This document shows positions 16,984-60,172 of a DNA stretch of 64,000 bases, in pieces (within the stretch, counting starts at the first letter, position 1; the number at the start of each line of letters is the position of its first letter). Made by a program: the position numbers and the translations under genes. The stretch comes from Macrostomum lignano (lineage: Eukaryota). Location: positions 43,843 through 107,842 of the forward strand of contig NIVC01003270.1 of NCBI GenBank assembly GCA_002269645.1. The letters run 5' to 3'. The notes under the pieces were generated by a model. That model saw nothing but the letters and a program-made list of their open reading frames with translations. It was not told the origin of the DNA and searched no databases.

Positions 16984-17017
<34 letters not shown>

Positions 17018-17045
17018 AGCCAGACAGCCAGACAGACAGACAGCC

Positions 17046-17076
<31 letters not shown>

Positions 17077-17105
17077 AAGACAGACAGACAGACAGACAGA
17101 CAGAA

Positions 17106-17136
<31 letters not shown>

Positions 17137-17137
17137 A

Positions 17138-17168
<31 letters not shown>

Positions 17169-17266
17169 AAGACAGACAGACAGACAGACAGACACAGACA
17201 GACAGCCAGGCAGACAGACAGACAGACAGACAGACAGCCAGGCAGATAGACAGACAGACAGACAGC

Positions 17267-17298
<32 letters not shown>
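16792..17298. repeat. (GACA)n microsatellite, WDR34-like intron 3
   Basis: Read directly. Confidence 0.98.
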
Positions 17299-18046: not shown

Positions 18047-18107
18047 CTGCAATGAGTGACATGTTCAGGTGCACTGATTGTGGATAAATGCGGTCTGTTT
18101 GGGAGCA

Positions 18108-18160
18108 CAGACGGACAGACACACACAGACAGACAGACACACACAGACAGACAGACAGGC

Positions 18161-18230
<70 letters not shown>

Positions 18231-18232
18231 GC

Positions 18233-18297
<65 letters not shown>

Positions 18298-18344
18298 CAC
18301 AGACAGACAGACAGGCAGGCAGGCAGACAGACAGACAGACAGAC

Positions 18345-18389
<45 letters not shown>

Positions 18390-18443
18390 GGCAGGCAGGC
18401 AGACAGACAGACAGACAGACAGACAGGCAGACAGACAGACAGG

Positions 18444-18491
<48 letters not shown>

Positions 18492-18510
18492 TAGACAAAC
18501 AGACAGACCC
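18108..18510. repeat. (GACA)n microsatellite, WDR34-like intron 2
   Basis: Read directly. Abuts the donor site. Confidence 0.98.
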
Positions 18511-18935: not shown

Positions 18936-19338
18936 TCAGGTGGGGAGTTTACTCAGGTAGCCCATTGCTCAGGTGGGGAATTTACTCAGGTAGCCCATTG
19001 CTGAGGTGGGGAATTTACTCAGGTAGCCCATTGCCCAGGTGGGGAATTTACTCAGGTAGCCCATTGCTCAGGTGGGGAATTTACTCAGGTAGCCCATTGC
19101 CCAGGTGGGGAATTTACTCAGGTAGCCCATTGCTGAGGTGGGGAATTTACTCAGGTAGCCCATTGCTCAGGTGGGAATTTACTCAGGTAGCCCATTGCTC
19201 AGGTGGGGAATTTACTCAGGTAGCTCATTGCTCAGGTGGGGAATTTACTCAGGTAGCCCATTGCTCAGGTGGGGAATTTACTCAGGTAGCCCATTGCTGA
19301 GGTGGGGAATTTACTCAGATAGCTCATTGCTCAGATGG
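18936..19338. repeat. 33-bp minisatellite (17+16-bp dimer, each half starting CTCAGGT), ~12 copies, WDR34-like intron 1
   Basis: Unit CTCAGGTGGGGAATTTA-CTCAGGTAGCCCATTG. Confidence 0.95.
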
Positions 19339-19432
19339 GTATTTTACATACTCAGGCGGGTAACCCACTTCTCATTTAACTTATTTGTTAAATAACTTAT
19401 TAGTTTATAAAACCAATAAAACTCAGACACAC

Positions 19433-35609: not shown

Positions 35610-36065
<456 letters not shown>

Positions 36066-37227
36066 ATATTTATCAATTGATAAAGTGAAACTTTTTTTAG
36101 AAATGCCGAGGTGACCGGGTGCTCCAACTGAGTTGCACCAACGGTGAGTTGCTGCTGCTGGTGGCCACTTGTTTAACATTTGCTCTTCGTATGTTGCTAT
36201 GTTGTATTTTGGAGACAAAACCAAGTTTCAGATAGTAACTCAAAAGCCTGCATACATGTACATGTATTTTTATGGCGAGTAATTCTCATAGCTGATTCTG
36301 GGTCCGCGCTGATCTAAATTGTTTACCTTCTTAACACGATTTTTTAACTGCTTTGAGACAATTATTTTTTTAGACTAAAACATATTTGTATATGGAAAAA
36401 GAAATGGACAAGCAGACACTCGGAGAGGCAGACACTTTTTTATTGTAATCGGTCACTGTCAGTGTCACTGAGTACATCTGTCACTACATTTATTACTTTT
36501 TAAATTGCACTGTTCCAAACAGCTCTGTGCAGTTTCCATTATCAATCCGAGTATTTCACCTTTTCAGCAATAAGTTCTTTAGTCCATGATAAAAAACTTG
36601 TGAATACCTTCGCTCCAATTAACTTGTATTGAGTTTGTCAGCAGTTGATGTGCATTGATGCCTCAGTCTCTATCTCTCTGAGCACAAATATACTCTGAGC
36701 TAATACAGACTATACAGGTGCGCACTTAAACAAACGCTTACACAGGGCGTATGAAAAGAAATTTGTTTCTCATTTATACCGATGAATTTTTAAATATTCC
36801 TATTCATTATCCTCGCAAGCTGCTTTTCCCTTTTGACTCTCAAACTGAGTGGTAAAATTTAAATTCATTTATTGACGCAGACACACGGTGGGCCTAATGG
36901 TCTTGGCGCCACCCCCGCAGTAGAAAAGAGATCCCGATGGAGGCTCATGCGGCTGCGACTGAAAGCAAATCGAGTCTCCCAACGTCACTCGGCTCACTGA
37001 TTCTGGCTAAGGGCACATCGAGTTAATGCATGGAGCTAATGGATTTCAATCCGGCTCATTCCGCTCCGACAGCTGTTTACCGACATGCAAGCGGCTGCCT
37101 GCTGAGAGTCTCCATGGCAACGCATCAATAAGGCTGCTGTTATTTAGCCTCTCTCTCGCACAAAGATTCGGCAATCTTCTGCTTAATGCCGCACTGACAA
37201 ACCCAGCCTGGCCATGCCTCTCTGCAG

Positions 37228-41806: not shown

Positions 41807-43606
41807 ATTTGCTTAGAACATTATTTACATTAGGATGTTAGCAGGCTTAAAGCATACATGTAGTTAGTTCAAAAATTCTGTTGTGTCTTCTGTTTTTTAA
41901 TGACAAATCAAAAAGCAAGTCTGGAACTTAAAATGTTAAACTAACCAGCCGATCTTCGGCTCTTGTTTTTTTATTATTTATTTCCTGCAAGCCTAGCTTG
42001 CTCTCGTTACGCGTAGAAGCGTACGGTGCGCTGGGAAGCAAATCATTTTGTTTATGCTTGACTTATAGCCACAACAAATTCTTTGTTTCCATCACAGATA
42101 CTAAAAACACAATTTTTATTTTTTCATTATCTATGGTTGCCACCCCAAATGGAGCGCAGATTTCTGTAGTGTTAGTAATATAGCATTTTTCAAGCCAATT
42201 GAGCCTAGGAGCAAACAATTTATCCTGTGGGAAAATAAAGCTACTGAAAACTTGCTTTTCATTATCTAGCTCGTATGGCTAGAAAGTGGTCTATGGAGCA
42301 ACCAATTTGAGAATCTGGGCGCGCAATTAATCTTTTTCACAGTGCTCGTACATCCTTTACGAATAGCTTAACTGAAATAGCGTCTGCAAATAGATGGCAT
42401 TTCAAAAAAACGATTGACATTAGCACTTTGATTTCAAAGGAGCCAGTAAAAACAGACAAAGGCAACACCATGCCATACAGTATAAGCCGAGAACAATCGT
42501 GTCTCTCAAAACAGTGTTAGACATATTGAAATCAAACCCGATCAATGTTCAGAGAATTTCTTTCTCGTTTAAGCAGCCCGGGATAAAGCGAAGCATCTGC
42601 CGAAGCCTACTGTGACGTTGCCACTTTCAGTAGCCCCGCCAAGGGCCGTTTTGACATACGGTACCAATCTTTAATATTACCAGTTCCGTATTCCCATGTC
42701 TGCTTAAAGTAGTGCCCTAAGAATTTTAATCAACTGCGTACAATTGTAAACTCTGCGTACAGCGCGTGATCAATAATTTCTGTTCCTGTTTTTCGCAGTC
42801 AGCCAATAGAAATACGCCGCATTAATTATACTAATTTCTCTCGCGCTACCCCCTCCCCCCCAGCCCGGTCCTTATCAGTTCTGTCTGGCCGTGCGCTCGG
42901 GCCTTTTTCACCCTTCGCTCCTTCCCGCGACTCTACTCGGCTCCACTCCGCTCCACTTCGCTCCGCCGCCACCCTTGTGAGCCCGTGTAGTCTGTAGGCC
43001 CTGGCCGCCTCTACTTTGTTTTTCTCTCTCTCTGCCTCACTTCGCCACGGCTTAAGCTACGCCTTTGCCAGCCTCAGTCACGCCACTCCTACTGTTTGTT
43101 AAGCTCTCACTACGAGCACCGCCATCGTTCATCCTCTGCCATTACTTCGCCATCATAGTCTCAGACTCATCAACCTACTCAGCCTTCCACCAATTAATTT
43201 ATTGTTGCGTAGCCACCAGTGCATCTTGTACGAAGTCAACCAATACTTTGACCTGCCTCTGTTGTGTGACGAATAAAGGCGGGAAGACGTACGGTTTGTG
43301 TAGCGGTTAAATTTAATAATCTAGAGCCAGTAGCCGACTAGATTATTAAATTTATCCTAGACTATAAAGGATAAGCTAGGATTGGCTAGTCATATGGCTC
43401 AGAAGCTCAGAAGGTATAAAAATAAAAGAATACGACGCATAGACCAATCGATTCTCACATTGGATGGCTTTTTATCACTTTGCTTGTCCTTTATTGTCTA
43501 TGGCCCATAGACTAAGGCTGCACGCAGCCAGGCCCTTCTCAGTCAGCGTAGGCAGGATTCTCATTTTGGGTGGCTTTATTCTCAGTTAGGCTGACATTAG
43601 GCTCTA

Positions 43607-45223
43607 GATAAGACTTTAGACATTCAAAATAAGACTGCATAGGATCGCAAGCAAGGCCAGGCTAGCCACAGCCAGAGCAAGCCCAGTCTTGGCTGCAGGG
43701 ATGGCTTGGCCATAGACTAAAAAATGGAATATCAAAATGAGAATAAGACGCTCAATATGAGACCGGCAGTGAACGTAATTTATTTGCTTTTTGGCAGTCA
43801 CCATACAAACAGCTAAGGAGAAATTAGGCAATAAACAAGAAGCAGAATAGCATATGGAAATGTTTAGTCCATCACTGAAGTCAGCCTGGCGGACTGCGTT
43901 AGAAGGCCATTCGATTTAAGCACCTGCCAAAGTGCCTCTGACAGCGGAGTTCCCATCTGGCCGCCTTCTCAGCTGTGATGACGAGGCCGACTGCCTCCCG
44001 TGCAATCCGCTCCAGCAGCATGAAGCGCCACTCCTCTTGTGTGAAATCTGCAGGTGGAGCAGCCTCTTCCTCGACTAGCTCAGGGTTCGCCAGCATCTGG
44101 CGAATGCGCGCCTTGAGTGCTGAGTTCGCGAGCTCCACAGGATTGAGGAAAGGCGAGTATGGTGGCAGAATCCTGATGGAGATCTGGTTCTGGAGCTGCT
44201 GAGGGACCCTCGCCGCACGATGAAAATTTGCCCATCCATCAGGATGACCCATTGGGCTCCCTGGTCCAATTGGTTGCATCGCTCGCACAGGGCGTCCACA
44301 ACTCTTGGAAGCGAGCAACGGTTTGTCCACCGCGGTAGACATTCGAGTGCAGGAGACCAAACTCAGTCGCAATCGCCATGCACACCGAGACATTTGGCCC
44401 GCGTTGCGTTGTCACAGTTCGCCGAATAGGACGGCCTTTCAGCGCACGACCCTGAGAGCGCCTGGTCCAGAGATTGAACCCGGTCTCGTCCAAGAAGACA
44501 GTGCGAGTCTCTTGAGCCAAATTCAGCATGAACATGGCGTATTTGTTCCTGGCTTCGATATTTGCCTCAGAATTTGTCCTCATCCTCGCGTCAGTGCCTT
44601 TGACAGCCAGCTTCACGGTGTATAGCAGACCGTGCAGCATTCGGTCCACGCACTTGTAGCTGACTTGCGGCTTTTCCGGAAACTGCGTAGCCAGACGTGA
44701 GGACATTTCCTTAAGTGTGAGGAAGTGATTTTCCTCCAGCGTCTCAGTCAGGAAGTCTCTCATCTTGTTGTCAGCCTTGCAATTTTCTTCTCTCCGACCG
44801 CCACGAGGTAGGGATTCAACTCTGCCATGGAGGCGGAACTCCGCAGCGATCCTAAAGGCGGACGCTCTCTTGATCTTGAGAATTTGAGCGGCAGCTAGGA
44901 TGGTTGATCCATTGTTTACTGCGTCGATCAGACGCTGACGGTCTGCTGCAGGAATCGATGGTGCCATCACAGTGAAATCCAAGGGGTCAGATGCAACCCA
45001 AGGGGTGAAGAAGGAGAGCTGGCTGAGGGTCAGGGTTAGAGCGATATCTGAAGGCTTTCACACTCAGTCTCATATTGAGCGTCTTATTCTCATTTTGATA
45101 TTCCATCTTTTAGTCTATGGCCAAGCCATTCCTGCAGCCAAGACTGGGCATGCTCTGGCCGTGGCTAGCCTGGCCTTGCTTGCGATCCTATGCAGTCTTA
45201 TTTTGAATGTCTAAAGTCTTATC
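43607..45223 (-). mobile_element. IS630-Tc1-mariner DNA transposon (DD~34E, Gambol/IS630-like), frameshifted
   Basis: ~157-bp near-identical TIRs (43607-43763 / 45067-45223) flanked by TA on both sides. Transposase from ATG 44967 to 43899 with N-terminal HTH, VFLDETGFNL, ILMD..FH and LPPYSPFLNPVE. Two frameshifts near 44300 and 44235. Confidence 0.92.
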
Positions 45224-45564
45224 TAGAGCGTCAAAAGCTACATTTATACGAGTAGACGAGCGTAGCAATAAGACTGAATATTTACAGTATCACATATGGT
45301 ATTTATAACAATATTAATCACATAAATATGAAATTTATAAACGGAAAAATATGGTTTACATAATATACGCTCGTATACAGCGTACGTAAAATATATTTTA
45401 TTAGTCTGTTGTTTTAGTTAATGTTTTAAGACTAGATACTTAAGATGTGTTTTTAATTCATTTTCATCAAAAAAGGTATTAGCAAAAACAGCACGCCTAA
45501 ATGATAGAAAAGTAGCCTATAATTTTCTCATTTTTATTTGAACAGGAAATAGTGGCTGTCAGCT

Positions 45565-48500
45565 ATGTCTACTATTGCCCAGGTCGGCGGTATTCGTAAA
45601 AGTTCAAGCAGCTCAGTCTCAGATTTAACTGAAGTGGACAGGCACTCATCTGACGGATATAACACCCCTTCCCGTTTAGAGACTGACTACAATATTGATG
45701 AATTTTTGAAGGCTTACTACGAGTACAAGAAGGAAAATATTCCTGATAATCAAGATTCTGAGGATGACGAGGATAATGAGAATGATGGGCTGCAAAAACG
45801 GCCGCCTCTGGATCACGGATTTATGGACGATCTGCTGGTTTACGTACTGGATGGAAAGTTTGACGAAGCGGTTGAATTTGTCAAAACCATGTACGACCGA
45901 CAGCTTGATTTGCAACAAGACAGGCAAAAGAGAACTGCCGCTCACTATGCTGCAATGAGGGCTGAAGGAGCAGGACTGCTCAAGAAATTAGTACAAAAAG
46001 TGGGTACTTCTTGTCTGAAGCATGAGGACTGCAACTTGGTAACTCCACTTCAATATGCTGCTCAGAACTATTCACTGTGGCAGTTTAAGGATCTATTTCC
46101 AGGTGCGGAACAAGAGCTGCGGAGCTCAACTCATAGAAATAAACTCGGAGACACGCTGGCCCACTTTGCTGCTAGAAACACTGGAGATAAAGAAGTCATC
46201 AAAGCGGTGCTCCACGGCAACAAGCCAGATCGGTTGTTATGGCCAAACAACAGAGGCCGCACGGTGCTGCATGAGGCCGTTGAGCACTGCAGTGCCGAAA
46301 CTGTGAAGGACCTGCTTAGCTTCATCTCAGTGGGCCTGGGAGGTGAGAACAATGATGAAGATACCCAAGGCTCCTTAACAACCAATGATCAGCAACAGGA
46401 AGGAGAAGACGAAACGAGTACAAGCACAAACCAAAGGAAACAAAAAGTATCGCAGGAGGTCATTCAGAAAATGAAAAATCTGAAAGATTCCACCGGAAGC
46501 ACACTGGCCCACTGCGCCTCTAGGAACCGAAATACCAACCGCGATGATGGCGAAGTGTTCCTGGAAGTGAAACAGCTATTTGGCAATGAGTGCCTTAACT
46601 GGGAGAACTCAATGAATCAGACAGTGCTGCAGGCAGTTATCCAGTACAGCTCAAGCAGCACGGCTGAACAGATGGTAGATGCTTTCGGTACAGAAAATGC
46701 AGATCAGTTTTTCACGCATACGGATGAGTCTAAAAACGGTTACCTTCACTTTGCCGCGATGTACAAAAAAGTAAACACATTTGGAAAGATATTAGAGCTC
46801 ATGAAGAAAGCTCGCGTAGGCGAAGAGGAAGATGAGCACATAAAGCAAATTTGTGACAAGCCCAATGTCGACGGCCAAACAGTTTTGCTCCTTGCGGCCG
46901 AAAACGAAGATGAAATATCGATTCTGAAGGAGGAACTTCCCTTAGATGATTGGGGGAAAGTGACTGGTAAGCGCGACAATAGAAACAGAAACATGCTTTT
47001 CTACGCCTGCATGAACTGGAATTTCTCAGTTTTTGAGTTTCATTCAAACGAAGCAGACATTACGGTTTTCACAGAAGTCGATGCCGATGGAAACAGTCTT
47101 TTACACGCTCTGTTCATGAATCCCAACAACGATATAGAAAATTCTCTACCTAATTTTTTTAAATTTCTGAAATTCTTTGCTGATAAAACGGCTGATGGAA
47201 TTAGGCAGGAAAACAATTTGGGAAAAAACTTTCTTCACTGCTCCCAGATAAATGAGGAAATTCTGATTAAAATTTTGACTGACGCAAATGAACATCAAAT
47301 GGAAGAAAAATTGAAACAAGTTTTTCTGAGCAAGGAAGGCGTTCACTTAGTTCACGAGTTCGCATGCAGGTACAACCTGGTGAAACTGATGAGACCCCTT
47401 TCTGAGATTGCTGGAGTGAAGAAAGCCGAACTGCGGAGCAAAAAAGTCGAGAGAGGTCCCTACAAGGGTGCAACCTGCCTGCACTTCGCCTGCCGGGCCG
47501 GTCACAAGGCCAACATTGCTTACTTGTTGAAAAAGAGCCTTAGTATCGACGCTAGAGACGACGATGGGCGCACTTGCGTAGATTACGCTCGCAGCGCGGA
47601 TCAGCTGGAAAAGCTTGCGGAGGTAACGGGGAAATCAGAGCTGGAATTTCTTCGCCTTCTGGACCCGACTCGAGCAGCCTTAAAAGTACCTGACCGAGCC
47701 GCCGCCATGCAGTACATCAGTCAGATTGTCGATCAGCCGGTGATAGATGAAGTAGGACGAGGCCAGTCACAAGTCATAAATGAAACACAGACAGACCAGC
47801 CCAAACATTCAACTGACGCATCAAGCAAGCCTTCGACTGAAGTCTCGGTGTTTAAGGCAGTCTGGAAGGATGGCTCGACCAGGGCGCTTCGAAGCGCACT
47901 TAAGCTAGACCCACTAAATTTAGATACTGAAGCAAAATTCATTCGGTATTGGGTGAAGAAGCATCCCAAAGATGAATGCATCGATGAAAACATAGAAGAG
48001 ATAAGAATAGTTAACCTTGCGCTTAGACATGGGAAGCTCAATCTTCTCCCCGACCTCATTCTGACGAGGCAGTTTGAGCTGATTCCCAGCTGCATTCTGC
48101 TGATAATTCAGTTGAAGCAAAAAAAGGTCAATACTAAGGTATGCTGCGACCAGCTAAAACGTCTTAAAAGCAAAGTCATTAGTATTGCTGTAAACACTGT
48201 GGACGAACTGTACACAAATGCGAACGGCAGAGAAGAGAGGCAGCTTTTATTCGACTACATTAAAGGTGAAATCGGAGGTCCAAAGTTTAGCATTGCCGAC
48301 GAGGAGTCGCAACAGGCTCAGCAGCACACTATTTTGGAACTGGTGGAAATAGCTGAATGCGAGGATCTGTACGCTGCAGACTGCATCTACAAACTGGCTA
48401 AAAAAGAATGGAAAAAGTCAAAAATCTGTGGAAGTCCAAGAGCTCACTTCGTATTTAGCTTGGCTATCTACATACTATTCATGCTATACTTTGCTTGGTT

Positions 48501-49374
48501 TATTACCGACTTTAGGAGGACATTCGATTCGTCGGCTTCTGATGCGATTTTGACAGCATTCGCGCTGCTGTTTTTCGTGCTCGAACTCATAGAACTATTC
48601 TCGCTTCCGCCAAACAAAATTTGTTGTTGCAGAAGCAGGTGGACCAAGTGCTCAATGTACTGGAGAAATGTCTACAACGTGTTCGACTTCATAGCACTGG
48701 TCCTTCTGTGGCTTGGCATTGTCTGGAAATGGATAATATTCGGAAAATCGGAGTACGTCACTGCCTACGCGTGTCAGTCTGTTCTCAGCACGTCGTTCCT
48801 TTTTTTTGGATTTCGGTCTGTTGCCTTTCTAAGCTCGTGGCAAAGGACCGGGGCCGTCATCGTCATACTGAAGAATTTAATCGTCAAAGATTTGGGCCCC
48901 TTCTTAGCTATCATTGCCCTTGTTTTCCTGTCTTTCGGGGTGTTCTTCTTCAATTTGCTGTTCCCGTCAATAACTGCGGAGACTAGCGAAACTCGGGACA
49001 CATTTTACTGGTGGCGAGTCATGCTGCAGATTTTTACAATGCCGTTTGACTTGCTTTTTACCAACTACGATCGCCTTGAGTTCGAAACTCCTACAAGCGG
49101 CTCTCCCCAGAAAGTCGGTTCAGTGACAAACGCCATCGGGCTATCCTGGTTTCGCAATCTTATGATGTTTGTCTTCCTCCTTCTGGTAAACATTGTAATG
49201 GTGAACCTTCTTATCGCTCTGTTTAGTCTCCGAGTGAGTACACTTCACAGTAAGGCCATCGGAATTTGGAGACAGGGATATTTTGAGCTGCTTCTTATGT
49301 ATCAGAGACGTGCTGAACTGTGTCGGTCCTGCGTTGGAAGGAGTGCCTCGATTTATCCAGATGACAACCAAGAC
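45565..49374 (+). CDS. TRP cation channel with N-terminal ankyrin array and TRPM-like transmembrane region, exon 1
   Basis: About 12 ankyrin-type motifs (e.g. GRTVLHEAVEH; GATCLHFACRAGHKANIAYLL...DDDGRTCVDYA). Six hydrophobic segments with WRNVYNVFDF, KDLGPFL, VNLLIALFS and a TRP-helix-like IWRQGYFELLLMYQRR. In-frame stop upstream of the ATG. Donor GAC|GTGAGA. Confidence 0.88.
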
Positions 49375-49479
49375 GTGAGAGCTGATTTGGTAGTTTGCTA
49401 TAAAATTAAATCCTATTTAATTGGTTTGTAATTTCAGTTCCTATTTTATTGCACTCAGCTTTCTTCTCTTGCCTTACAG

Positions 49480-49800
49480 GTTGTAATAGACGGGAAAAAA
49501 TATAAAAAGTCATACCTGCGTTACCTGCGTTACCAAGCTCAACAACTGCGTAAGATTCGTCCAAGGCTGTCTCAAGAATTGGAAAAAAATCGAAGCGATT
49601 TCGAACAGCTAAAAGCGCATTTTGAGAACAACATGGCACAAGTGCAATCTGAGACCAGCGAGGATCTAGCGCACTTACAGCGCAAGTTTAAGGAACTTGA
49701 GCACGCTCAGAATCTCAGCCTCCAAGAAATCCTAGAAATCCTGAAACGTCTGCCACAGCAGAGCCAGCAGGAACCTGAAACTGACCAAGGTAGAACGTAG
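49480..49800 (+). CDS. TRP channel, exon 2 (coiled coil)
   Basis: Acceptor gccttacag|GTT, phase 0, in frame with the track ORF at 49579. Heptad-like LEKNRSDFEQLKAHF...LQEILEILKRL. Confidence 0.75.
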   Translation, partial: VVIDGKKYKKSYLRYLRYQAQQLRKIRPRLSQELEKNRSDFEQLKAHFENNMAQVQSETSEDLAHLQRKFKELEHAQNLSLQEILEILKRLPQQSQQEPETDQGRT

Positions 49801-51409
49801 CAGTGACTGTTGGTAATCAAGCTGATTGCAAACTATTGGCTACCTGAGACAGATAGTTTCTTTTTACTCTTACGACTAAAAGTTAGTGTGAGCTGCCTAA
49901 TATCTCTTATTACAGGTGAAATCTCGAAATTAGGTCAGAATTTTTAGTATATAGGATCGACAATAGAAGTATGAAATTAACAAATTAAATTTCGGTCTTA
50001 AAACATATTACGATAAGAATGCCAGTAGAAAAGCTTTGAATTTGCTTTTGTTTCAGCAGAAAATACTTTATTTTAAGTCTAAAACCGATAAAAACACAAC
50101 TACGAGTACATGAGAACTTTAAGCAGTTTTTTTTCGAATTCAAAAAGGGATTTGATTCGATCATGAAAAGCGCACTGCAGGGAGCACACACTGCTTCACT
50201 ATCATACTTTTTATACGGTGAGTTTGATGCATATGCTTTTTCATTTTTATTCCGACTTATTTAATTCAAGTTTTTATTACTTTTTTATTCCCAAGACCTT
50301 TATAACTGTTTCAGCTGAATGTTTAAAAAATTATTCTAGAAGTTTTTCATTAGCTATTATAAAAAAATTTACGCATTCTTCGTATTTATTGCTTTTAATT
50401 AATATGAAAGACAAGGTTCCGTAGGTTTTGTGAATTTTGTTGCTAACCATTTTTAAAAACGCAGACTCAACTATTAGTAGTTTTTATTAGAGTAGTATTT
50501 GTAGTTTTAGCTATAGCTAGTGTTGTCATAACTTGCGTGAAGAAATTATTATAATATCAAAATAAAACAAAATATCAATATATTCAACGTTTTTTAATTA
50601 TTCAACGTAGATGCTTTAAGTGCAGGACACGATCTTTAATAAATATGATAGCTTTAAATTGAATGACCCAAATAAATTCGCTTCTATACGAGAGCTTCTT
50701 TTCTCCATAATGCTTTCTCTGCTGCGATGTGCAACACTTGTATCAACACTTCTCTGGTGAAAAGCCATTTGATTGTGACGAGCAACGTGTATTTTTATTA
50801 TCAACAATAAAGCTATCAGTTTTTAATGAACCAAGACCAATTTCAAAGATATGTATGCTGGTTGAGTTTTGGCAGGTTATTTGTGTCAGTTTGAAGAGCT
50901 AAACCTCTTACGCTCGTAAAAAAATACAATTCTCGCTACGGTTGCCCCGAATGTTATTAACAGATGGATGCTGGTAAAACTAACCAGTTCCTCCAGCTCA
51001 TCCAGTTCCTCCGGACAACAGGACGTGCCACACTCTTTTCTCCAGAGGACCACACTGTAGGACAGACTGGGGGACCACCCTGACCGACTTCGTACCTTTG
51101 CCTGTCTGCGGGTCTTCAGGGGCTAGCGGAATGGATGACACTTGCCTCCCCGTTGTGTCCAATGGACCAACCTGCAGCTACTCGAAAGTCAAGAAGCGGG
51201 TAAAGTACGAGTATTTCTCAACTGAGTTCACTAGGCACGAATGGTCAGGCATTTATAACCTCATTCACCATGCAGTAGGAGCGCCAGTTATTATTTTCTG
51301 TCGTTGGTCAGCTACTTTCAGTCTCCATACTGAATTTCGAAACTGAGTTAAAGCAAATTCTAATATTTAGGTTACTATCATTATAAATTTTTTAACCAAA
51401 TACTGGAAA

Positions 51410-52010
<601 letters not shown>

Positions 52011-52128
52011 TATACTAACATGCACCGGCTATCTTGTAAATAGCGAGAAACTAAAGTTGCTGATGAAAGAGAGTCCTGTGCACGCGGCTGCAAATAGTGG
52101 CATATATCCTCCCATAATCCACCAGGTT

Positions 52129-52554: not shown

Positions 52555-53030
52555 TGATACTGCCGCACTAGCACTGGCGAGATAGGCGGCAATGCAAATG
52601 TACAGGGAAAAATACACTGCGGAGATATGAGCCCTATCTCTGTGCATTGGGACGGCTAAGCACTGCAGAGATATGAGCTCTATCTCTGTGCATTGGGGAC
52701 GGCTAAGCACTGCAGAGATATGAGCTCTATCTCTGTGCATTGGGGACGGCTAAGCACTGCAGAGATATGAGCTCTATCTCTGTGCATTGGGGACGGCTAA
52801 GCACTGCAGAGATATGAGCTCTATCTCTGTGCATTGGGGACGGCTAAGCACTGCAGAGATATGAGCTCTATCTCTGTGCATTGGGGACGGCTAAGCACTG
52901 CGGAGATGGAGGCGATTCATGATACTGCCGCACTAGCACTGGCGAGATAGGCGGCAAAAAGGATATAGGAAAAATACACTGCGGAGAGGATCCTATCTCT
53001 GTGCATTGGGAACGGCTAAACATTGCAGAG
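52555..53030. repeat. Composite repeat: duplicated hairpin motif plus 47-bp palindromic tandem units
   Basis: GATACTGCCGCACTAGCACTGGCGAGATAGGCGGCAA at ~52556 and 52921. Six 46-47-bp units start at ~52617, 52663, 52710, 52757, 52804 and 52851. Confidence 0.9.
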
Positions 53031-54169: not shown

Positions 54170-57100
54170 TTGGATGGTTGTTGACTGGACGTATGGTTGT
54201 GACTGGATTGTTGCTGACTGGATGGTTGCTGACTGGATGGACGGTTGCTGACTGGATGGTTGCTGACTGGACGTATGGTTGTGACTGGATTGTTGCTGAC
54301 TGGAATGGTTGCTGACTGGACGGATGGTTGCTGACTGGATGGTTGCTGACTGGACGTATGGTTGTGACTGGATTGTTGCTGACTGGATGGTTGCTAACTG
54401 GATGGACGGTTGCTCACTGGATGGCTGCTGACTCGATGGCTGCTGACTAGATGGCTGCTGACTGGATGGTTGCTGACTGGATGTATGGTTGTGACTGGAT
54501 TGTTGCTGACTGGATTGTTGCTGACTGGATGGACTGTTGTTGACTGGATGGTTGCTGACTGGATGGATGTTTGCTGACTGGATGGTTGCTGACTGGATGG
54601 TTGCTGACTGGATGGTCGCTGACTGGATGGTTGTTGACTGGATGGGTGCTGACTGGATGGATGGTTGCTGACTGGATGGATGTTTGCTGACTGGATGGCT
54701 GCTGACAGGATGGCTGCTGACTGGATGGTTGCTGACTGGACGGTTGCTGACTCGATGGATGGTTGCTGACTAGATGGTTGCTGCCTGGATGGTTTCCGAC
54801 TGGATGGATGTTTGCTGACTGGATGGTTGCTGACTGGACGGATGGTTGTGACTGGATTGTTGCTGACTGGATGGACGGTTGCTGACTGGATGGTTGCTGA
54901 CTGGATGGTTGCTGACTGGATTGTTCCTGACTGGATTGTTGCTGACTGGACGGACGGTTGCTGACTGGATGGTTGCTGACTGGATGTATGGTTGTGACTG
55001 GATTGTTGCTGACTGGATTGTTGCTGACTGGATGGACGGTTGCTGACTGGATGGTTGCTGACTGGATGTATGGTTGTGACTGGATTGTTGCTGACTGGAT
55101 GGATGGTTGCTGACTGGATGGACTGTTGTTGACTGGATGGTTGCTGACTGGATGGATGTTTGCTGACTGGATGGTTGCTGACTGGATGGTTGCTGACTGG
55201 ATGGTTGCTGACTGGATGGTCGCTGACTGGATGGTTGTTGACTGGATGGTTGCTGACTGGATGGACGGTTGTTGACTGGATGGTTGCTGACTGGATGGAT
55301 GATTGCTGACTGGATGGTTGCTGACTGGACGGTTGCTGACTGGATGGATGGTTGCTGACTGGATAGTTGCTGACTGGATGGACGGTTGCTGACTGGATTG
55401 TTGCTGACTGGATTGTTGCTGACTGGATGGACGGTTGCTGACTGGATGGTTGCTGACTGGATGTATGGTTGTGACTGGATTGTTGCTGACTGGATTGTTG
55501 CTGACTGGATTGTTGCTGACTGGATGATTGGTTGCTGACTTGATGGACTGTTGTTGACTGGATGGTTGCTGACTGGATGGATGTTTGCTGACTGGATGGT
55601 TGCTGACTGGATGGTTGCTGACTGGATGGTCGCTGACTGGATGGTTGTTGACTGGATGGGTGCTGACTGGATGGACGGTTGCTGACTGGATGGCTGCTGA
55701 CTGGATGGCTGCTGACAGGATGGCTGCTGACTGGATGGTTGCTGACTGGACGGATGGTTGCTGACTGGATGGTTGCTAACTGGATGGACGGTTGCTCACT
55801 GGATGGCTGCTGACTCGATGGCTGCTGACTAGATGGCTGCTGACTGGATGGTTGCTGACTGGATGTATGGTTGTGACTGGATTGTTGCTGACTGGATTGT
55901 TGCTGACTGGATGGACTGTTGTTGACTGGATGGTTGCTGACTGGATGGATGTTTGCTGACTGGATGGTTGCTGACTGGATGGTTGCTGACTGGATGGTCG
56001 CTGACTGGATGGTTGTTGACTGGATGGGTGCTGACTGGATGGATGGTTGCTGACTGGATGAATGTTTGCTGACTGGATGGCTGCTGACAGGATGGCTGCT
56101 GACAGGATGGTTGCTGACTGGACGGTTGCTGACTCGATGGATGGTTGCTGACTAGATGGTTGCTGCCTGGATGGTTTCCGACTGGATGGATGTTTGCTGA
56201 CTGGATGGTTGCTGACTGGACGGATGGTTGTGACTGGATTGTTGCTGACTGGATGGACGGTTGCTGACTGGATGGTTGCTGACTGGATGGTTGCTGACTG
56301 GATTGTTCCTGACTGGATTGTTGCTGACTGGATGGACGGTTGCTGACTGGATGGTTGCTGACTGGATGTATGGTTGTGACTGGATTGTTGCTGACTGGAT
56401 TGTTGCTGACTGGATGGACGGTTGCTGACTGGATGGTTGCTGACTGGATGTATGGTTGTGACTGGATTGTTGCTGACTGGATGGATGGTTGCTGACTGGA
56501 TGGACTGTTGTTGACTGGATGGTTGCTGACTGGATGGATGTTTGCTGACTGGATGGTTGCTGACTGGATGGTTGCTGACTGGATGGTTGCTGACTGGATG
56601 GTCGCTGACTGGATGGTTGTTGACTGGATGGTTGCTGACTGGATGGACGGTTGTTGACTGGATGGTTGCTGACTGGATGGATGATTGCTGACTGGATGGT
56701 TGCTGACTGGACGGTTGCTGACTGGATGGATGGTTGCTGACTGGATAGTTGCTGACTGGATGGACGGTTGCTGACTGGATTGTTGCTGACTGGATTGTTG
56801 CTGACTGGATGGACGGTTGCTGACTGGATGGTTGCTGACTGGATGTATGGTTGTGACTGGATTGTTGCTGACTGGATTGTTGCTGACTGGATTGTTGCTG
56901 ACTGGATGATTGGTTGCTGACTTGATGGACTGTTGTTGACTGGATGGTTGCTGACTGGATGGACGGTTGCTGACTGGATGGTTGCTGACTGGATGGATGT
57001 TTGCTGACTGGATGGTTGCTGACTGGATGGTTGCTGACTGGATGGTCGCTGACTGGATGGTTGTTGACTGGATGGGTGCTGACTGGATGGATGGTTGCTG

Positions 57101-60100
57101 ACTGGATGAATGTTTGCTGACTGGATGGCTGCTGACAGGATGGCTGCTGACTGGATGGTTGCTGACTGGACGGTTGCTGACTCGATGGATGGTTGCTGAC
57201 TAGATGGTTGCTGCCTGGATGGTTTCCGACTGGATGGATGTTTGCTGACTGGATGGTTGCTGACTGGACGGATGGTTGTGACTGGATTGTTGCTGACTGG
57301 ATGGACGGTTGCTGACTGGATGGTTGCTGACTGGATGGTTGCTGACTGGATTGTTCCTGACTGGATTGTTGCTGACTGGATGGACGGTTGCTGACTGGAT
57401 GGTTGCTGACTGGATGTATGGTTGTGACTGGATTGTTGCTGACTGGATTGTTGCTGACTGGATGGACGGTTGCTGACTGGATGGTTGCTGACTGGATGTA
57501 TGGTTGTGACTGGATTGTTGCTGACTGGATGGATGGTTGCTGACTGGATGGACTGTTGTTGACTGGATGGTTGCTGACTGGATGGATGTTTGCTGACTGG
57601 ATGGTTGCTGACTGGATGGTTGCTGACTGGATGGTTGCTGACTGGATGGTCGCTGACTGGATGGTTGTTGACTGGATGGTTGCTGACTGGATGGACGGTT
57701 GTTGACTGGATGGTTGCTGACTGGATGGATGATTGCTGACTGGATGGTTGCTGACTGGACGGTTGCTGACTGGATGGATGGTTGCTGACTGGATAGTTGC
57801 TGACTGGATGGACGGTTGCTGACTGGATTGTTGCTGACTGGATTGTTGCTGACTGGATGGACGGTTGCTGACTGGATGGTTGCTGACTGGATGTATGGTT
57901 GTGACTGGATTGTTGCTGACTGGATTGTTGCTGACTGGATGATTGGTTGCTGACTTGATGGACTGTTGTTGACTGGATGGTTGCTGACTGGATGGATGTT
58001 TGCTGACTGGATGGTTGCTGACTGGATGGTTGCTGACTGGATGGTCGCTGACTGGATGGTTGTTGACTGGATGGGTGCTGACTGGATGGACGGTTGCTGA
58101 CTGGATGGCTGCTGACTGGATGGCTGCTGACAGGATGGCTGCTGACTGGATGGTTGCTGACTGGACGGATGGTTGCTGACTGGATGGTTGCTGACTGGAT
58201 GTATGGTTGTGACTGGATTGTTGCTGACTGGATGGATGGTTGCTGACTGGATGGACTGTTGTTGACTGGATGGTTGCTGACTGGATGGATGTTTGCTGAC
58301 TGGATGGACTGTTGTTGACTGGATGGTTGCTGACTGGATGGTTGCTGACTGGATGGTCGCTGACTGGATGGTTGTTGACTGGATGGTTGCTGACTGGATG
58401 GATGGTTGCTGACTGGATAGTTGCTGACTGGATGGACGGTTGCTGACTGGATTGTTGCTGACTGGATTGTTGCTGACTGGATGGACGGTTGCTGACTGGA
58501 TGGTTGCTGACTGGATGTATGGTTGTGACTGGATTGTTGCTGACTGGATTGTTGCTGACTGGATTGTTGCTGACTGGATGATTGGTTGCTGACTTGATGG
58601 ACTGTTGTTGACTGGATGGTTGCTGACTGGATGGATGTTTGCTGACTGGATGGTTGCTGACTGGATGGTTGCTGACTGGATGGTCGCTGACTGGATGGTT
58701 GTTGACTGGATGGGTGCTGACTGGATGGACGGTTGCTGACTGGATGGCTGCTGACTGGATGGCTGCTGACAGGATGGCTGCTGACTGGATGGTTGCTGAC
58801 TGGACGGATGGTTGCTGACTGGATGGTTGCTGACTGGATGTATGGTTGTGACTGGATTGTTGCTGACTGGATGGATGGTTGCTGACTGGATGGACTGTTG
58901 TTGACTGGATGGTTGCTGACTGGATGGATGTTTGCTGACTGGATGGACTGTTGTTGACTGGATGGTTGCTGACTGGATGGTTGCTGACTGGATGGTCGCT
59001 GACTGGATGGTTGTTGACTGGATGGTGCTGACTGGATGGACGGTTGCTGACTGGATGGCTGCTGACTGGATGGCTGCTGACAGGATGGCTGCTGACTGGA
59101 TGGTTGCTGACTGGACGGATGGTTGCTGACTGGATGGTTGCTGACTGGATGGTTGCTGACTGGATTGTTGCTGACTGGATGGATGGTTGCTGGACGAATG
59201 GTTGCTGACTGGATGGTTGCTGACTGGATGGTTGCTGACTGGATGGTTGCTGAATGGATGGATGGTTGCTGACTGGATGGTTGCTGACTGGATGGTTGCT
59301 GACTGGACGTATGGTTGTGACTGGATGGTTGCCGACTGGATGGTCGCTGACTGGACGGATGATTGCTGACTGGACGGATGGTTGCTGACTGGATGACTGG
59401 ATGCTGACTGGATGGTTGTGACTGGATGGTTGCTGACTGGATGATTGCTGACTGGATTGTTGCTGACTGGATGGACGGTTGCTGACTGGATGGCTGCTGA
59501 CTGGACGGATGCTGACTGGATGGTTGCTGACTGGATGGTTGCTGACTGGATGGATGCTGACTGACGAATGGTTGCTGACTGGATGGATGTTTGCTGACTG
59601 GATGGTTGCTGACTGGATGGTTGCTGACTGGATGGATGGTTGCTGGACGAATGGTTGCTGACTGGATGGTTGCTGACTGGATGGTTGCTGACTGGATGGT
59701 TGCTGAATGGATGGATGGTTGCTGACTGGATGGTTGCTGACTGGACGTATGGTTGTGACTGGATGGTTGCCGACTGGATGGTCGCTGACTGGACGGATGA
59801 TTGCTGACTGGACGGATGGTTGCTGACTGGACGGATGGTTGCTGACTGGATGACTGCTGACTGGATGGTTGTGACTGGATGGTTGCTGACTGGATGATTG
59901 CTGACTGGATTGTTGCTGACTGGATGGACGGTTGCTGACTGGATGGCTGCTGACTGGACGGATGCTGACTGGATGGTTGCTGACTGGATGGTTGCTGACT
60001 GGATGGATGCTGACTGGACGAATGGTTGCTGACTGGATGGATGTTTGCTGACTGGATGGTTGCTGACTGGATGGTTGCTGACTGGATGTTGCTGACTGAC

Positions 60101-60150
60101 GGCTGCTGACTGGACGGATGCTGACTGGATGATAGTTGCTGACTAAATAG
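54170..60150. repeat. 6-kb minisatellite, 15/19-bp units (GGATGGTTGCTGACT and variants) with higher-order repeats
   Basis: Tandem array read directly. Rare variants recur at fixed spacings of 1382 and 1048 bp. Confidence 0.97.
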
Positions 60151-60172
60151 TTGCCGACTTTAGAATAGCAAG

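What the first reader, a model, noticed from the sequence alone, without database searches (positions are those of the whole stretch)
45565..49800. TRP channel joining a long ankyrin array to a TRPM-like linker, pore and TRP helix
Seen: about 12 ankyrin-type motifs (45930-47590), then IVNLALRHG...SIAVNTVDELY...TILELVEIAECEDLYAADCIYKLAKKEWK, six TM segments, SFGVFFFNLLFP...QIFTMPFDLLF, NLLIALFS...IWRQGYFELLLMYQRR and a C-terminal coiled coil. Established: canonical TRPM channels lack an N-terminal ankyrin array. TRPA carries 14-17 ankyrins but has different S6 and post-S6 motifs. Inference: the linker resembles TRPM MHR4/pre-S1 (TCLxLA...CxQxLLxxxW), and the pore and TRP helix resemble TRPM (FGV..aiL.P; FY.PY; NLLIAMF...WKFQRY.LI.EY..RP). 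This could be an ankyrin-for-MHR1-3 domain swap, i.e. an unclassified TRP architecture. It is pharmacologically relevant because a flatworm TRPM is the praziquantel target.
Basis: partly seen in the sequence, partly recalled or inferred. Interest (0 to 1): 0.82.

Follow-up and report, generated by a model that had tools for sequence, protein, structure and literature searches.

The report
Ankyrin-bearing TRPM-like flatworm channel gene
This is an intact flatworm (Macrostomum lignano) gene for an ion channel with a melastatin-type (TRPM) pore and about 14 ankyrin repeats in place of the usual TRPM N-terminus; the design is real but already known from TRPM_MCLZ, the parasite channel targeted by meclonazepam, of which this is a divergent free-living relative.

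Summary
A 1270-codon exon (45565-49374), a 105-nt GT-AG intron and a 106-codon exon (49480-49800) encode a 1376-aa protein. It has about 13-14 ankyrin repeats, a helical linker, six TM helices, a pore helix, a TRP helix and a helical tail.

The channel core is TRPM-like. All 45 PDB sequence hits (E<1e-3) and all top-50 Foldseek hits are TRPMs, and an NJ tree separates it from TRPN/TRPC with 96% bootstrap. No SLOG/MHR1-2 domain is detectable.

The architecture is not unclassified. The organism is Macrostomum lignano. The nearest relatives outside its own paralog family are flatworm channels with N-terminal ankyrins plus a TRPM MHR3/4 domain. Their parasite members are TRPM_MCLZ (Smp_333650), confirmed by matching the published residue numbering. 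The literature already describes TRPM_MCLZ as ankyrin-bearing, SLOG-less and "TRPM-like".

What I did not find described:
- a large M. lignano expansion (31 clusters at 50% identity) of a long-ankyrin subfamily in which the MHR3-like part is reduced;
- the presence of this clade in a free-living flatworm.

Ka/Ks against a paralog is 0.16 in the TM domain and 0.63 in the ankyrins. Verdict: real, functional-looking, a new variant of a known kind, of moderate interest.

The parts
45565..49374 (+). Coding exon 1 (aa 1-1270). It encodes the N-terminal acidic region, ankyrin array, linker, six TM helices and TRP helix without interruption.
   Evidence: ORF list; sequence and splice donor GTGAG at 49375; translation; same junction in annotated paralogs.
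49375..49479 (+). 105-nt GT-AG intron.
   Evidence: Donor AAGAC|GTGAGA; acceptor TTCTCTTGCCTTACAG|GTTGT; in frame. The paralog locus L003 spans 4308 nt for 1400 aa, consistent with one intron of the same size.
49480..49800 (+). Coding exon 2 (aa 1271-1376 plus TAG). It encodes a basic stretch (KKYKKSYLRYLRYQAQQLRKIRPR) followed by a charged helical, coiled-coil-like tail.
   Evidence: Only weak generic coiled-coil Pfam hits, no TRPM_tetra. Modest heptad signal.
45922..47649 (+). Ankyrin-repeat array of about 13-14 repeats (aa ~120-695). It is interrupted by an acidic low-complexity loop at aa 261-288 (46345-46428).
   Evidence: Pfam Ank_2 1.9e-26, Ank_4, Ank_3, Ank, Ank_5. TxLHxA-type motifs at aa 122, 195, 231, 311, 351, 437, 474 and 508 by scan; further motifs read by eye at aa ~158, ~390, ~553, ~592, ~635 and ~668. 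AF2 helix pairs with pLDDT mostly 75-91 and a disordered loop at model residues 177-204. Foldseek matches to NOMPC, dTRPA1 and ankyrin-B/R.
47731..47826 (+). Disordered spacer between the ankyrin array and the linker (aa 723-754).
   Evidence: pLDDT below 50 in both models.
47836..48429 (+). Helical linker and pre-S1 domain (aa ~758-955), homologous to the C-terminal part of the TRPM MHR3/4 ('TRPM2-like', PF25508) domain. It contains LILTRQFELIPSC (aa 831-843) and the pre-S1 helices TILELVEIAECEDLY...KLAKKEWKK (aa 922-951).
   Evidence: hhalign: this family vs the TRPM_MCLZ-like family 95.8%, E 6.6e-9; the latter vs canonical TRPM 99.7%, E 1.4e-26; direct comparison not significant. PF25508 is above the gathering score in M. 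lignano family-B proteins, overlapping the same motif. Foldseek alignments to TRPMs span 530-700 columns of the 571-residue model.
48436..48834 (+). S1-S4 voltage-sensor-like domain (aa 958-1090). It carries the TRPM-type Ca2+-site residues E1007, E1010 (S2), N1038, D1041 (S3) and the S4 arginine R1084.
   Evidence: AF2 helices. Pairwise alignments to nvTRPM2 and TRPM4. Column conservation across 33 family A and B sequences: E 32/33, E/D/Q, N 33/33, D/E.
48850..49230 (+). Pore domain: S4-S5 linker and S5, pore helix (YWWRVMLQIF), atypical filter region FTMPFD...TNYD, and S6 (VNIVMVNLLIALFS).
   Evidence: AF2; alignment to TRPM4, where LQIF is conserved but the FGQ filter is replaced; alignment rows.
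49231..49338 (+). TRP helix (aa ~1223-1258) with a degenerate TRPM-type TRP box, IWRQGYFELLLMYQRR.
   Evidence: Continuous helix at model residues 491-559. Alignment to the TRPM W-K-x-Q-R-Y box with only the Trp invariant. TRPN and TRPC have EWKF(G/A)R preceded by LIAMM.

Best explanation
The locus is a functional Macrostomum lignano gene with two coding exons. It encodes a subunit of a tetrameric TRP cation channel from the flatworm-specific, ankyrin-bearing 'TRPM-like' clade, whose characterised member is TRPM_MCLZ, the schistosome meclonazepam target. Within that clade it belongs to a divergent subfamily that is strongly expanded in M. lignano. In this subfamily the ankyrin array has grown to about 14 or more repeats, and the MHR3-like part of the TRPM homology region is reduced to an MHR4-like linker.

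Inferred mechanism:
- The S1-S6 core gates like a TRPM channel, with the VSLD, S4-S5 linker and TRP helix coupled to the S6 gate.
- Cytosolic Ca2+ probably binds the conserved S2/S3 site (E1007, E1010, N1038, D1041) as a co-activator or modulator.
- The ankyrin array replaces the SLOG/MHR1-2 layer as the cytosolic assembly and regulatory platform for partner or cytoskeleton binding.

Shown: gene structure, domain architecture, TRPM-type core, absence of SLOG, relatedness to TRPM_MCLZ-like proteins, purifying selection. Inferred: tetrameric cation channel, Ca2+ modulation, a sensory role suggested by the lineage-specific expansion. The physiological stimulus is unknown.
For: Gene model.

Organism and paralogs:
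- The best hits are all M. lignano proteins (82-98% identity), all with Ank plus Ion_trans.
- The window is collinear at 97-99% identity with contig NIVC01001044.1 of GCA_002269645.1.

TRPM-type core:
- A profile of linker plus TM hits TRPM2/4/5/8/3/1/7 at 1.5e-12 to 1e-4, NOMPC only at 3.5e-4, and no TRPC, TRPA or TRPV among the 60 listed of 65 hits at E<0.01.
- The single TM sequence gives 45 PDB hits at E<1e-3, all TRPM.
- The AF2 model (pLDDT 74.9) gives Foldseek top-50 hits that are all TRPM, TMq 0.55-0.62.
- The NJ tree splits the ingroup from TRPC4 plus TRPN with 96/100 bootstraps.
- Family-A sequences score about 90-150 bits on TRPM or TRPM_MCLZ-like HMMs and about 10-45 bits on a TRPN HMM.

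No SLOG: with positive controls.

Link to TRPM_MCLZ:
- In the exhaustive search, the next tier after the M. lignano family is ankyrin-bearing flatworm proteins (Opisthorchis, Dicrocoelium, Schistocephalus and M. lignano, E 1e-27 to 1e-10), ahead of canonical TRPMs.
- Their orthologues occur across trematodes, cestodes and a monogenean.
- They carry H946/Y1038/R1120/T1121, Y940 and Y944 exactly as published for TRPM_MCLZ (PMC10788528, PMC12861061).
- Linker homology A-B E 6.6e-9 and B-TRPM E 1.4e-26.
- The ankyrin-bearing flatworm sequences form one NJ clade (64%), with family A at 100% and family B at 96%.

Functionality:
- The ORF is intact.
- Ka/Ks against the paralogous gene is 0.42 overall, 0.155 in the TM domain, 0.26 in the linker and 0.63 in the ankyrins.
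- The Ca2+-site residues are conserved.
- Sm.TRPM_MCLZ was cloned from cDNA and conducts cation current in HEK293 cells (PMC10788528).
Against: - The sister relation between this subfamily and the TRPM_MCLZ-like group has only 64% NJ bootstrap. TM-only HMM scores do not favour TRPM_MCLZ-like over canonical TRPM; for this gene they are 99 vs about 119 bits.
- Only distance methods were available, and the family sits on long branches.
- Pfam's TRPM2-like domain, Ion_trans and TRPM_tetra do not hit this protein directly.
- The selectivity-filter motif (FTMPFD) differs from the TRPM FGQ/FGE motif and from TRPM_MCLZ, so conduction properties cannot be predicted.
- No transcript evidence for this exact locus was obtained.
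- In the public assembly the same locus carries a frameshift near aa 408. This could be a sequencing error or a null allele.
Confidence: 0.8

Rival explanations
1. The flatworm ankyrin-bearing TRPM-like clade, including this gene, is not a derived TRPM. It would be an old, separate TRP lineage, sister to TRPM plus TRPS, that kept the ancestral ankyrin repeats which TRPM and TRPS lost. It would thus be a relic or an additional TRP family rather than a domain swap.
For: - In the NJ tree the clade branches outside all canonical TRPMs, including the choanoflagellate ones.
- Himmel et al. 2020 infer that ankyrins were lost before the TRPM-TRPS split, and they did not sample Platyhelminthes.
- PMC12861061 places TRPM_MCLZ 'next to' the TRPM orthologues, not within them.
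Against: - The basal position has only 41% support and is what long-branch attraction would produce.
- Every member whose organism could be identified is a flatworm. An ancient origin would need many independent losses.
- Family B keeps a bona fide TRPM MHR3/4 domain. This fits replacement of only the SLOG module in a TRPM ancestor.
Confidence: 0.12
2. It is a highly divergent TRPN (NOMPC-like) or TRPA-type channel. The resemblance of its pore to TRPM would then reflect the general similarity among group-1 TRP channels.
For: - The full-length model's best Foldseek matches are NOMPC (2e-18) and Drosophila TRPA1 with 17 ankyrins.
- The full-length sequence search retrieved fish TRPN1 at about 1e-11.
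- The initial full-length PDB search put NOMPC level with the TRPMs.
Against: - Those matches are driven by the ankyrin array. Without it NOMPC drops to 3.5e-4 (profile) or below threshold (single sequence), while TRPMs stay at 1e-12.
- A genuine TRPN query hits NOMPC at 1e-112 and TRPC at 1e-25.
- A TRPN HMM scores the family about five-fold lower than TRPM HMMs.
- The TRPN/TRPC signature LIAMM...EWKF is absent, and the TRPM-type LIA(L/M)F...W...Y is present.
- 96% bootstrap separates it from TRPN and TRPC.
Confidence: 0.03
3. The copy in the window is a recently duplicated, non-functional or decaying paralog (pseudogene in the making) within a repeat-rich region.
For: - The region is repeat-rich, and a Tc1/mariner-type remnant lies about 580 bp upstream.
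- The same locus in GCA_002269645.1 has a frameshift.
- No exact protein is on record.
- Ka/Ks in the ankyrin array is high at 0.63.
Against: - 1270 plus 106 codons are uninterrupted, with canonical splice sites.
- Ka/Ks in the TM domain is 0.155.
- Key gating and Ca2+-site residues are retained.
Confidence: 0.05

Closest known systems
TRPM_MCLZ (Schistosoma mansoni Smp_333650 and its trematode, cestode and monogenean orthologues): the meclonazepam-activated 'TRPM-like' channel
   Same: - Restricted to flatworms.
- N-terminal ankyrin repeats instead of the SLOG/MHR1-2 domain.
- TRPM-type linker, VSLD, pore and TRP helix.
- Conserved S2/S3 acidic/Asn Ca2+-site residues and S4 arginine.
- Very few exons (3 there, 2 coding exons here).
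- Nearest non-paralogous relatives in the exhaustive profile search and in the NJ tree (PMC10788528, PMC11731825, PMC12861061).
   Different: - About 20% identity over the linker and core.
- About 14 ankyrin repeats spanning about 575 aa, against ankyrin hits spanning about 250-280 aa there.
- The MHR3-like segment (IWRKILLND...DCYENGTG) is missing.
- The pore filter differs: FTMPFD against AFYSIFE, with the pore Tyr1038 aligned to Asp.
- The meclonazepam-sensitivity residue H946 is Ala1087, and T1121 is Ala1250.
- It is one of many paralogs in a free-living species, not a mostly single-copy gene in parasites.
- No functional data exist for it.
M. lignano TRPM_MCLZ-like paralogs (P0057, P0077, P0079, P0097, P0141)
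   Same: Same genome, N-terminal ankyrins, no SLOG, TRPM-like TM core; they fall in the same ankyrin-bearing clade.
   Different: They keep a Pfam-detectable TRPM2-like (MHR3/4) domain above the gathering score and the TRPM pore-loop Cys...CP motif. They have only about 4-6 ankyrin repeats.
Canonical TRPM channels (TRPM2, 4, 5, 8, 3, 7; flatworm TRPM_PZQ)
   Same: Fold and sequence of pre-S1, S1-S6, pore helix and TRP helix; the Ca2+-site motif E..(Q/E) / N..D; an MHR4-like linker.
   Different: - No SLOG/MHR1-2 and no detectable MHR3.
- A long ankyrin array is present.
- No NUDT9H or kinase domain, and no TRPM_tetra hit.
- The TRP box is WRQGYF instead of WKFQRY, and the filter is not FGQ/FGE.
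- 2 coding exons, against 36 exons for Sm.TRPM_PZQ (PMC11731825).
NOMPC/TRPN1 and TRPA1
   Same: The overall plan of a long N-terminal ankyrin solenoid, helical linker, 6-TM channel and TRP helix; these are the best whole-chain Foldseek matches.
   Different: The channel core is not of TRPN or TRPA type by sequence, profile or tree. There are about 14 repeats here, against 29 in NOMPC. The resemblance is analogy of architecture, not membership.

Membership tests
Canonical TRPM | N-terminal SLOG/MHR1-2 domain (Pfam LSDAT_euk) | tested here: not met
   No hit at E<=1 in the query or paralogs. Controls P0062, P0067, P0076 and P0130 hit at 5e-21 to 2e-77.
Canonical TRPM | MHR3/4 region (Pfam PF25508 TRPM2-like domain) before S1 | tested here: inconclusive
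   There is no direct Pfam hit, and direct hhalign to the TRPM linker is not significant. The link is transitive through TRPM_MCLZ-like proteins (E 6.6e-9, then 1.4e-26). Foldseek alignments to TRPMs cover the linker.
Canonical TRPM | TRPM-type S1-S6 and TRP-helix core | tested here: met
   All PDB sequence hits and all top-50 fold hits are TRPM. NJ separates it from TRPN and TRPC at 96%.
Canonical TRPM | Absence of an ankyrin-repeat array | tested here: not met
   About 13-14 ankyrin repeats.
Canonical TRPM | C-terminal tetramerising coiled coil (TRPM_tetra) | tested here: inconclusive
   The tail is helical and charged, but there is no TRPM_tetra hit and only a weak heptad signal. It was not modelled.
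Flatworm ankyrin-bearing TRPM-like clade (TRPM_MCLZ group) | N-terminal ankyrin repeats, no SLOG, TRPM-like transmembrane core, in one polypeptide | tested here: met
   The definition follows PMC11731825 and PMC12861061.
Flatworm ankyrin-bearing TRPM-like clade (TRPM_MCLZ group) | Phylogenetic grouping with TRPM_MCLZ orthologues to the exclusion of canonical TRPMs | tested here: inconclusive
   NJ gives 64% bootstrap for the joint clade. The profile search ranks these proteins ahead of TRPMs, and the linker homology is specific to them. TM-only HMM scores do not discriminate. No ML tree was possible.
Flatworm ankyrin-bearing TRPM-like clade (TRPM_MCLZ group) | Activation by (S)-meclonazepam through the VSLD pocket (His at the S4 position 946) | not testable with these tools
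   The sequence shows Ala1087 at the His946 position, Arg1249 conserved, and Ala1250 for Thr1121. Sensitivity needs an assay.
TRPN (NOMPC) | TRPN-type core with LIAMM...EWKFG TRP box and about 29 ankyrin repeats | tested here: not met
   NOMPC scores 3.5e-4 against TRPM at 1e-12. A TRPN HMM gives 21 bits. The motifs are absent. There are about 14 repeats.
TRPA / TRPC / TRPV | Core sequence similarity to the family | tested here: not met
   No TRPA, TRPC or TRPV chain appears among the PDB hits: E<1e-3 with the single sequence, and the 60 listed of 65 hits at E<0.01 with the profile. None is in the Foldseek top 50 for the core model.

The most novel reading that the evidence does not exclude
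The ankyrin-bearing TRPM-like channels of flatworms (TRPM_MCLZ plus this expanded Macrostomum subfamily) could be an ancient TRP lineage in its own right. It would branch before the TRPM-TRPS split and preserve the ankyrin-bearing ancestral state. The long-ankyrin Macrostomum subfamily could then serve as the mechanosensory, NOMPC-like channels of flatworms; TRPN is reported absent from schistosomes.
Probability: 0.12. Interest if true: 0.75.

Novelty: new variant of a known kind. Interest (0 to 1): 0.45.

Why it matters
- TRPM_MCLZ is a validated anthelmintic target whose odd ankyrin-for-SLOG design has so far been discussed only for parasites.
- This gene shows that the design is also present in Macrostomum, a free-living flatworm outside the parasitic groups, so it is probably older than parasitism.
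- In a tractable free-living model it has radiated into dozens of paralogs with much longer ankyrin arrays and a fast-evolving cytosolic domain on a conserved pore.
- That offers natural variants for learning how an ankyrin platform can replace the SLOG/MHR layer in gating a TRPM-type pore.
- It offers a model organism for studying the physiology of the drug-target clade.
- It adds a data point to the open question of when TRPM-type channels lost or regained ankyrin repeats.

Tried and rejected
- **Full-length searches.** Searching with the full-length protein is misleading. The ankyrin array pulls in DARPins, TRPN1 and fungal ankyrin proteins. All classification was therefore repeated on the linker and core alone.
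- **Word-indexed homology search.** With the core profile it found only M. lignano paralogs and one metagenome fragment. The exhaustive HMMER scan was needed to reach other flatworms and the TRPMs.
- **Direct hhalign.** Comparing the family-A linker with the canonical TRPM MHR3/4 region gave no significant match. The only family-A to TRPN match was an ankyrin repeat.
- **TM-only HMM scoring.** It could not decide between TRPM_MCLZ-like and canonical TRPM as the closest group.
- **Distance tree.** The NJ tree does not resolve whether the ankyrin clade lies inside or beside TRPM. No ML program was available.
- **Tail domain.** Pfam on the exon-2 tail gave no TRPM_tetra hit.
- **Transcript evidence.** Looking up the exact protein failed: the spliced protein was not accepted and the ORF product is not on record.
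- **Unnamed clade members.** The organism behind several of them (for example P0056 from run DRR639838, and P0052, P0064, P0073) could not be determined.
- **Chimeric assembly.** Considered and rejected. The ankyrin and channel parts share one uninterrupted exon, and the same architecture recurs at many independent M. lignano loci.

Full report
**1. What is in the sequence**

The + strand carries an ATG-initiated ORF of 1288 codons (45565..49431). It is the only ORF above 400 aa in the window.

Reading the 3' end shows a GTGAG donor directly after codon 1270 (49375). A pyrimidine-rich tract and an AG follow, ending at 49479. An in-frame continuation then runs to a TAG at 49798-49800. The spliced product is 1376 aa. 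The junction '...IYPDDNQD|VVIDGKKYKK...' is the same as in annotated Macrostomum lignano proteins P0001, P0003 and P0004.

Pfam finds only ankyrin families (Ank_2 at 1.9e-26) and nothing else at E<=1.

**2. Organism and paralogs**

The best database hits are M. lignano proteins:
- 98% identity for a partial model, P0003;
- 82% for full-length P0001;
- 29-69% for further paralogs.

The window is collinear at 97-99% identity with contig NIVC01001044.1 of assembly GCA_002269645.1. The exception is a ~2-kb stretch (43339-45309) that contains a degenerate Tc1/mariner-type DDE_3 transposase. In that public copy the ORF is split by a frameshift near aa 408, whereas the window copy is intact.

**3. 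The channel core is TRPM-like**

I repeated every comparison without the ankyrin array, because it dominates full-length searches.
- A profile of linker plus TM (aa 762-1270 with three paralogs, alignment A2) hits TRPM2, 4, 5, 8, 3, 1 and 7 in the PDB at 1.5e-12 to 1e-4. NOMPC scores only 3.5e-4. No TRPC, TRPA or TRPV is among the 60 listed of the 65 hits at E<0.01.
- The single TM sequence gives 45 hits at E<1e-3, all of them TRPM.
- For calibration, a true TRPN1 core hits NOMPC at 1e-112, TRPC4/5 at 1e-25 and TRPM2 at 1e-21.
- AlphaFold2 on aa 700-1270 gave pLDDT 74.9 and pTM 0.66 from 39 sequences. It shows a helical linker, two short strands, pre-S1 helices, S1-S6, a pore helix and one continuous S6-TRP helix.
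- The 50 best Foldseek matches in the PDB are all TRPM channels, with TMq 0.55-0.62. The alignments span 530-700 columns, so they include the linker.
- HMMs built from canonical TRPM cores or from TRPM_MCLZ-like cores score the family at about 90-150 bits. A TRPN HMM scores it at about 10-45 bits.

I also built an NJ tree of 113 sequences over 275 trimmed columns, using Scoredist distances and 100 bootstraps. The outgroups were Drosophila NOMPC and zebrafish TRPC4a, transcribed from the PDB alignments with lengths checked, plus three fish TRPN1. The tree separates the ingroup from TRPN and TRPC in 96% of replicates.

Diagnostic motifs agree with this. The protein has LIA(L/M)F...W...(Y/F).L..(E/M)Y..R as in TRPM. 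TRPN and TRPC have LIAMM...EWKF(G/A)R.

**4. No SLOG, but an MHR4-like linker**

LSDAT_euk and the PF25508 'TRPM2-like domain' do not hit this protein or its close paralogs. Canonical TRPM controls hit LSDAT_euk at 5e-21 to 2e-77 and PF25508 at 3e-24 to 7e-81. One control, P0139, shows PF25508 only.

I ran profile-profile comparison on the 330 residues before S1:
- this family vs the next-nearest family (B): 95.8% probability, E 6.6e-9, 129 columns;
- family B vs canonical TRPM: 99.7%, E 1.4e-26, 157 columns;
- this family vs canonical TRPM directly: not significant.

The shared segment contains the motif LILTRQFELIPSC. In family B this is LLRMRQFD(I/Q/V)(I/L)P, which lies inside the PF25508 hits of M. 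lignano family-B proteins. The linker is therefore an MHR4 homologue by transitive evidence. The MHR3-like part is missing.

**5. Ankyrin array**

Motif scanning finds TxLHxA-type cores at aa 122, 195, 231, 311, 351, 437, 474 and 508. Reading the sequence by eye adds cores at aa ~158, ~390, ~553, ~592, ~635 and ~668.

The AlphaFold2 model of aa 85-1270 (pLDDT 72) shows about 13-14 helix-pair repeats with pLDDT mostly 75-91. An acidic disordered loop (aa 261-288) interrupts them, and a disordered spacer (aa 723-754) follows.

With the array included, the best whole-chain Foldseek matches become NOMPC (2e-18), Drosophila TRPA1 with 17 repeats, and ankyrin-B/R. TRPMs follow. The overall plan is thus analogous to NOMPC and TRPA1, while the core is TRPM-like.

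**6. Relatives and what is already known**

The exhaustive HMMER scan of 1.84 billion representatives gave 259 hits at E<=0.001.
- **Family A.** 31 clusters at E<1e-30. Every one whose source could be named is M. lignano and ankyrin-bearing.
- **Family B.** The next tier, at 1e-27 to 1e-10, is again ankyrin-bearing flatworm proteins. These come from Opisthorchis, Dicrocoelium, Schistocephalus (auto-named 'TRPM7') and further M. lignano genes. Four of the M. lignano proteins pass Pfam's gathering score for the TRPM2-like domain and lack SLOG.
- **Canonical TRPMs.** Ankyrin-free TRPMs follow at about 1e-12.

A profile of family B retrieves orthologues across Schistosoma, Trichobilharzia, Heterobilharzia, Fasciola, Paragonimus, Calicophoron, Opisthorchis, Taenia, Echinococcus, Hymenolepis, Mesocestoides, Sparganum, Anoplocephala and a monogenean.

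These are TRPM_MCLZ. The S. guineensis protein (1380 aa) has H946, Y1038, R1120 and T1121. S. turkestanicum has Y940 and S. mekongi has Y944. This matches the numbering published for TRPM_MCLZ orthologues (PMC10788528, PMC12861061).

The literature states that TRPM_MCLZ:
- lacks MHR1/2-SLOG;
- has N-terminal ankyrin repeats;
- is encoded by three exons;
- forms a 'TRPM-like' group next to the TRPMs.

Those studies analysed parasitic species only. I found no paper in the held library that mentions this architecture in Macrostomum or other free-living flatworms. Himmel et al. 2020 concluded that ankyrins are absent from TRPM and TRPS, but they did not sample Platyhelminthes.

In my NJ tree all ankyrin-bearing flatworm sequences form one clade:
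- the joint clade has 64% bootstrap;
- family B has 96%;
- family A plus three intermediate M. lignano sequences has 92%;
- family A has 100%.

Its position relative to canonical and choanoflagellate TRPMs is unresolved (41% or less).

**7. Functional inferences**

- *Ca2+ site.* The S2/S3 residues that coordinate Ca2+ in TRPM2, 4, 5 and 8 are retained as E1007, E1010, N1038 and D1041. This role is established knowledge: E..Q in S2 and N..D in S3. The residues are conserved across families A and B.
- *Gating elements.* The S4 arginine, the S6 NLLIA motif and the TRP-helix tryptophan are kept.
- *Filter.* The filter region (LQIF-TMPFD...TNYD) differs from the TRPM FGQ/FGE motif.
- *Meclonazepam determinants.* H946 aligns with Ala1087, R1120 with R1249 and T1121 with Ala1250.
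- *Selection.* Against the paralogous gene for P0001 (locus L003), Nei-Gojobori Ka/Ks is 0.42 overall, 0.155 in the TM domain, 0.26 in the linker and 0.63 in the ankyrin array. The pore is under purifying selection and the cytosolic array evolves fast.
- *Mosaic divergence.* The 3' third of the gene and its downstream flank are 96.8% identical to that paralogous locus, against 84% for the 5' part. This suggests gene conversion or mosaic divergence.

**8. Verdict**

The claim of an unclassified architecture does not hold, because TRPM_MCLZ is a published precedent and the closest characterised relative.

The element I did not find described is a divergent, long-ankyrin, MHR3-reduced subfamily that has expanded strongly in a free-living flatworm. 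I rate it a new variant of a known kind, of moderate interest.

The main open question is whether the whole ankyrin-bearing clade arose by domain replacement within TRPM or is an older lineage. I could not run the ML phylogeny needed to settle that.

Noticed in passing
window 43899-44982 (- strand); insertion span about 43339-45309: Two overlapping ORFs (247 and 164 aa) carry HTH_32 and DDE_3 (Tc1/mariner-type transposase) matches split between frames, so this is a degenerate transposon about 580 bp upstream of the channel's ATG. The stretch has no blastn counterpart at the orthologous position of NIVC01001044.1 (L004), where about 1.4 kb of unmatched sequence lies instead.
   Followed up: partly
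L004 4769-8685 (NIVC01001044.1, GCA_002269645.1), orthologous to window 45565-49431: In the public M. lignano assembly the same gene is broken into two ORFs (408 aa and 894 aa) in different frames. The annotated protein P0003 therefore starts at Met413. The window copy is intact. This is either an assembly indel error or a null allele.
   Followed up: partly
window 48297-52017 vs 45383-48302, compared with L003 (NIVC01003930.1): The paralogous locus encoding P0001 is 96.8% identical to the window over the 3' third of the gene, the intron and 2 kb downstream, but only 84% identical over the 5' two-thirds. This mosaic pattern suggests gene conversion between paralogs or homeologs.
   Followed up: partly
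window 54171-60159: A 6-kb satellite of a 15-nt unit (TGGATGGTTGCTGAC, about 368 copies, 79% matches) with extreme GC skew (+0.44 to +0.49) and AT skew (-0.33 to -0.39).
   Followed up: no
window 10419-11170, 11723-12262, 13677-15122, 16788-17298, 18107-18508, 18936-19347, 35613-36074, 51410-52013, 52615-52907: There are many further tandem arrays: 20-33-nt minisatellites with up to 72 copies, and (ACAG)n, (ATCT)n and (TATC)n microsatellites of 100-150 copies. The window is very repeat-rich, and GC content shifts from about 0.52 (1-20 kb) to about 0.30 (20-30 kb).
   Followed up: no
window 9122-10279 and 12470-13522 (- strand): ORFs with WW domains (1.5e-17) and FF domains, including a PRPF40A-like FF domain (2e-16). 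These are probably exons of a PRPF40/TCERG1-type splicing or transcription factor gene on the minus strand, interleaved with minisatellites.
   Followed up: partly
P0177 (Opisthorchis viverrini OON13731.1, 2059 aa): This annotated 'ankyrin repeat protein' contains two successive linker-plus-TM modules (TM hits at 916-1144 and 1580-1815). That is what would result if the alternative exons 3a and 3b reported for some TRPM_MCLZ genes (PMC12861061) were fused into one gene model.
   Followed up: partly
P0130 (Clonorchis sinensis KAG5447154.1, canonical TRPM, 1708 aa): This SLOG-containing flatworm TRPM has an Ank_2 match (1e-7, 32.9 bits against a gathering score of 27.3) at aa 63-119, upstream of the SLOG domain. 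If real, ankyrin and SLOG would coexist in one flatworm TRPM, which bears on how the ankyrin-for-SLOG replacement arose.
   Followed up: no
L001 (Logan DRR639838 contig, 6849 nt), gene 1298-4516: A 1072-aa TRPM_MCLZ-like protein (P0056, ankyrins plus Ion_trans) is encoded as one uninterrupted ORF in a sequencing-run assembly of unknown organism. In the NJ tree it branches as sister to the parasite TRPM_MCLZ group. It may come from another free-living flatworm.
   Followed up: partly
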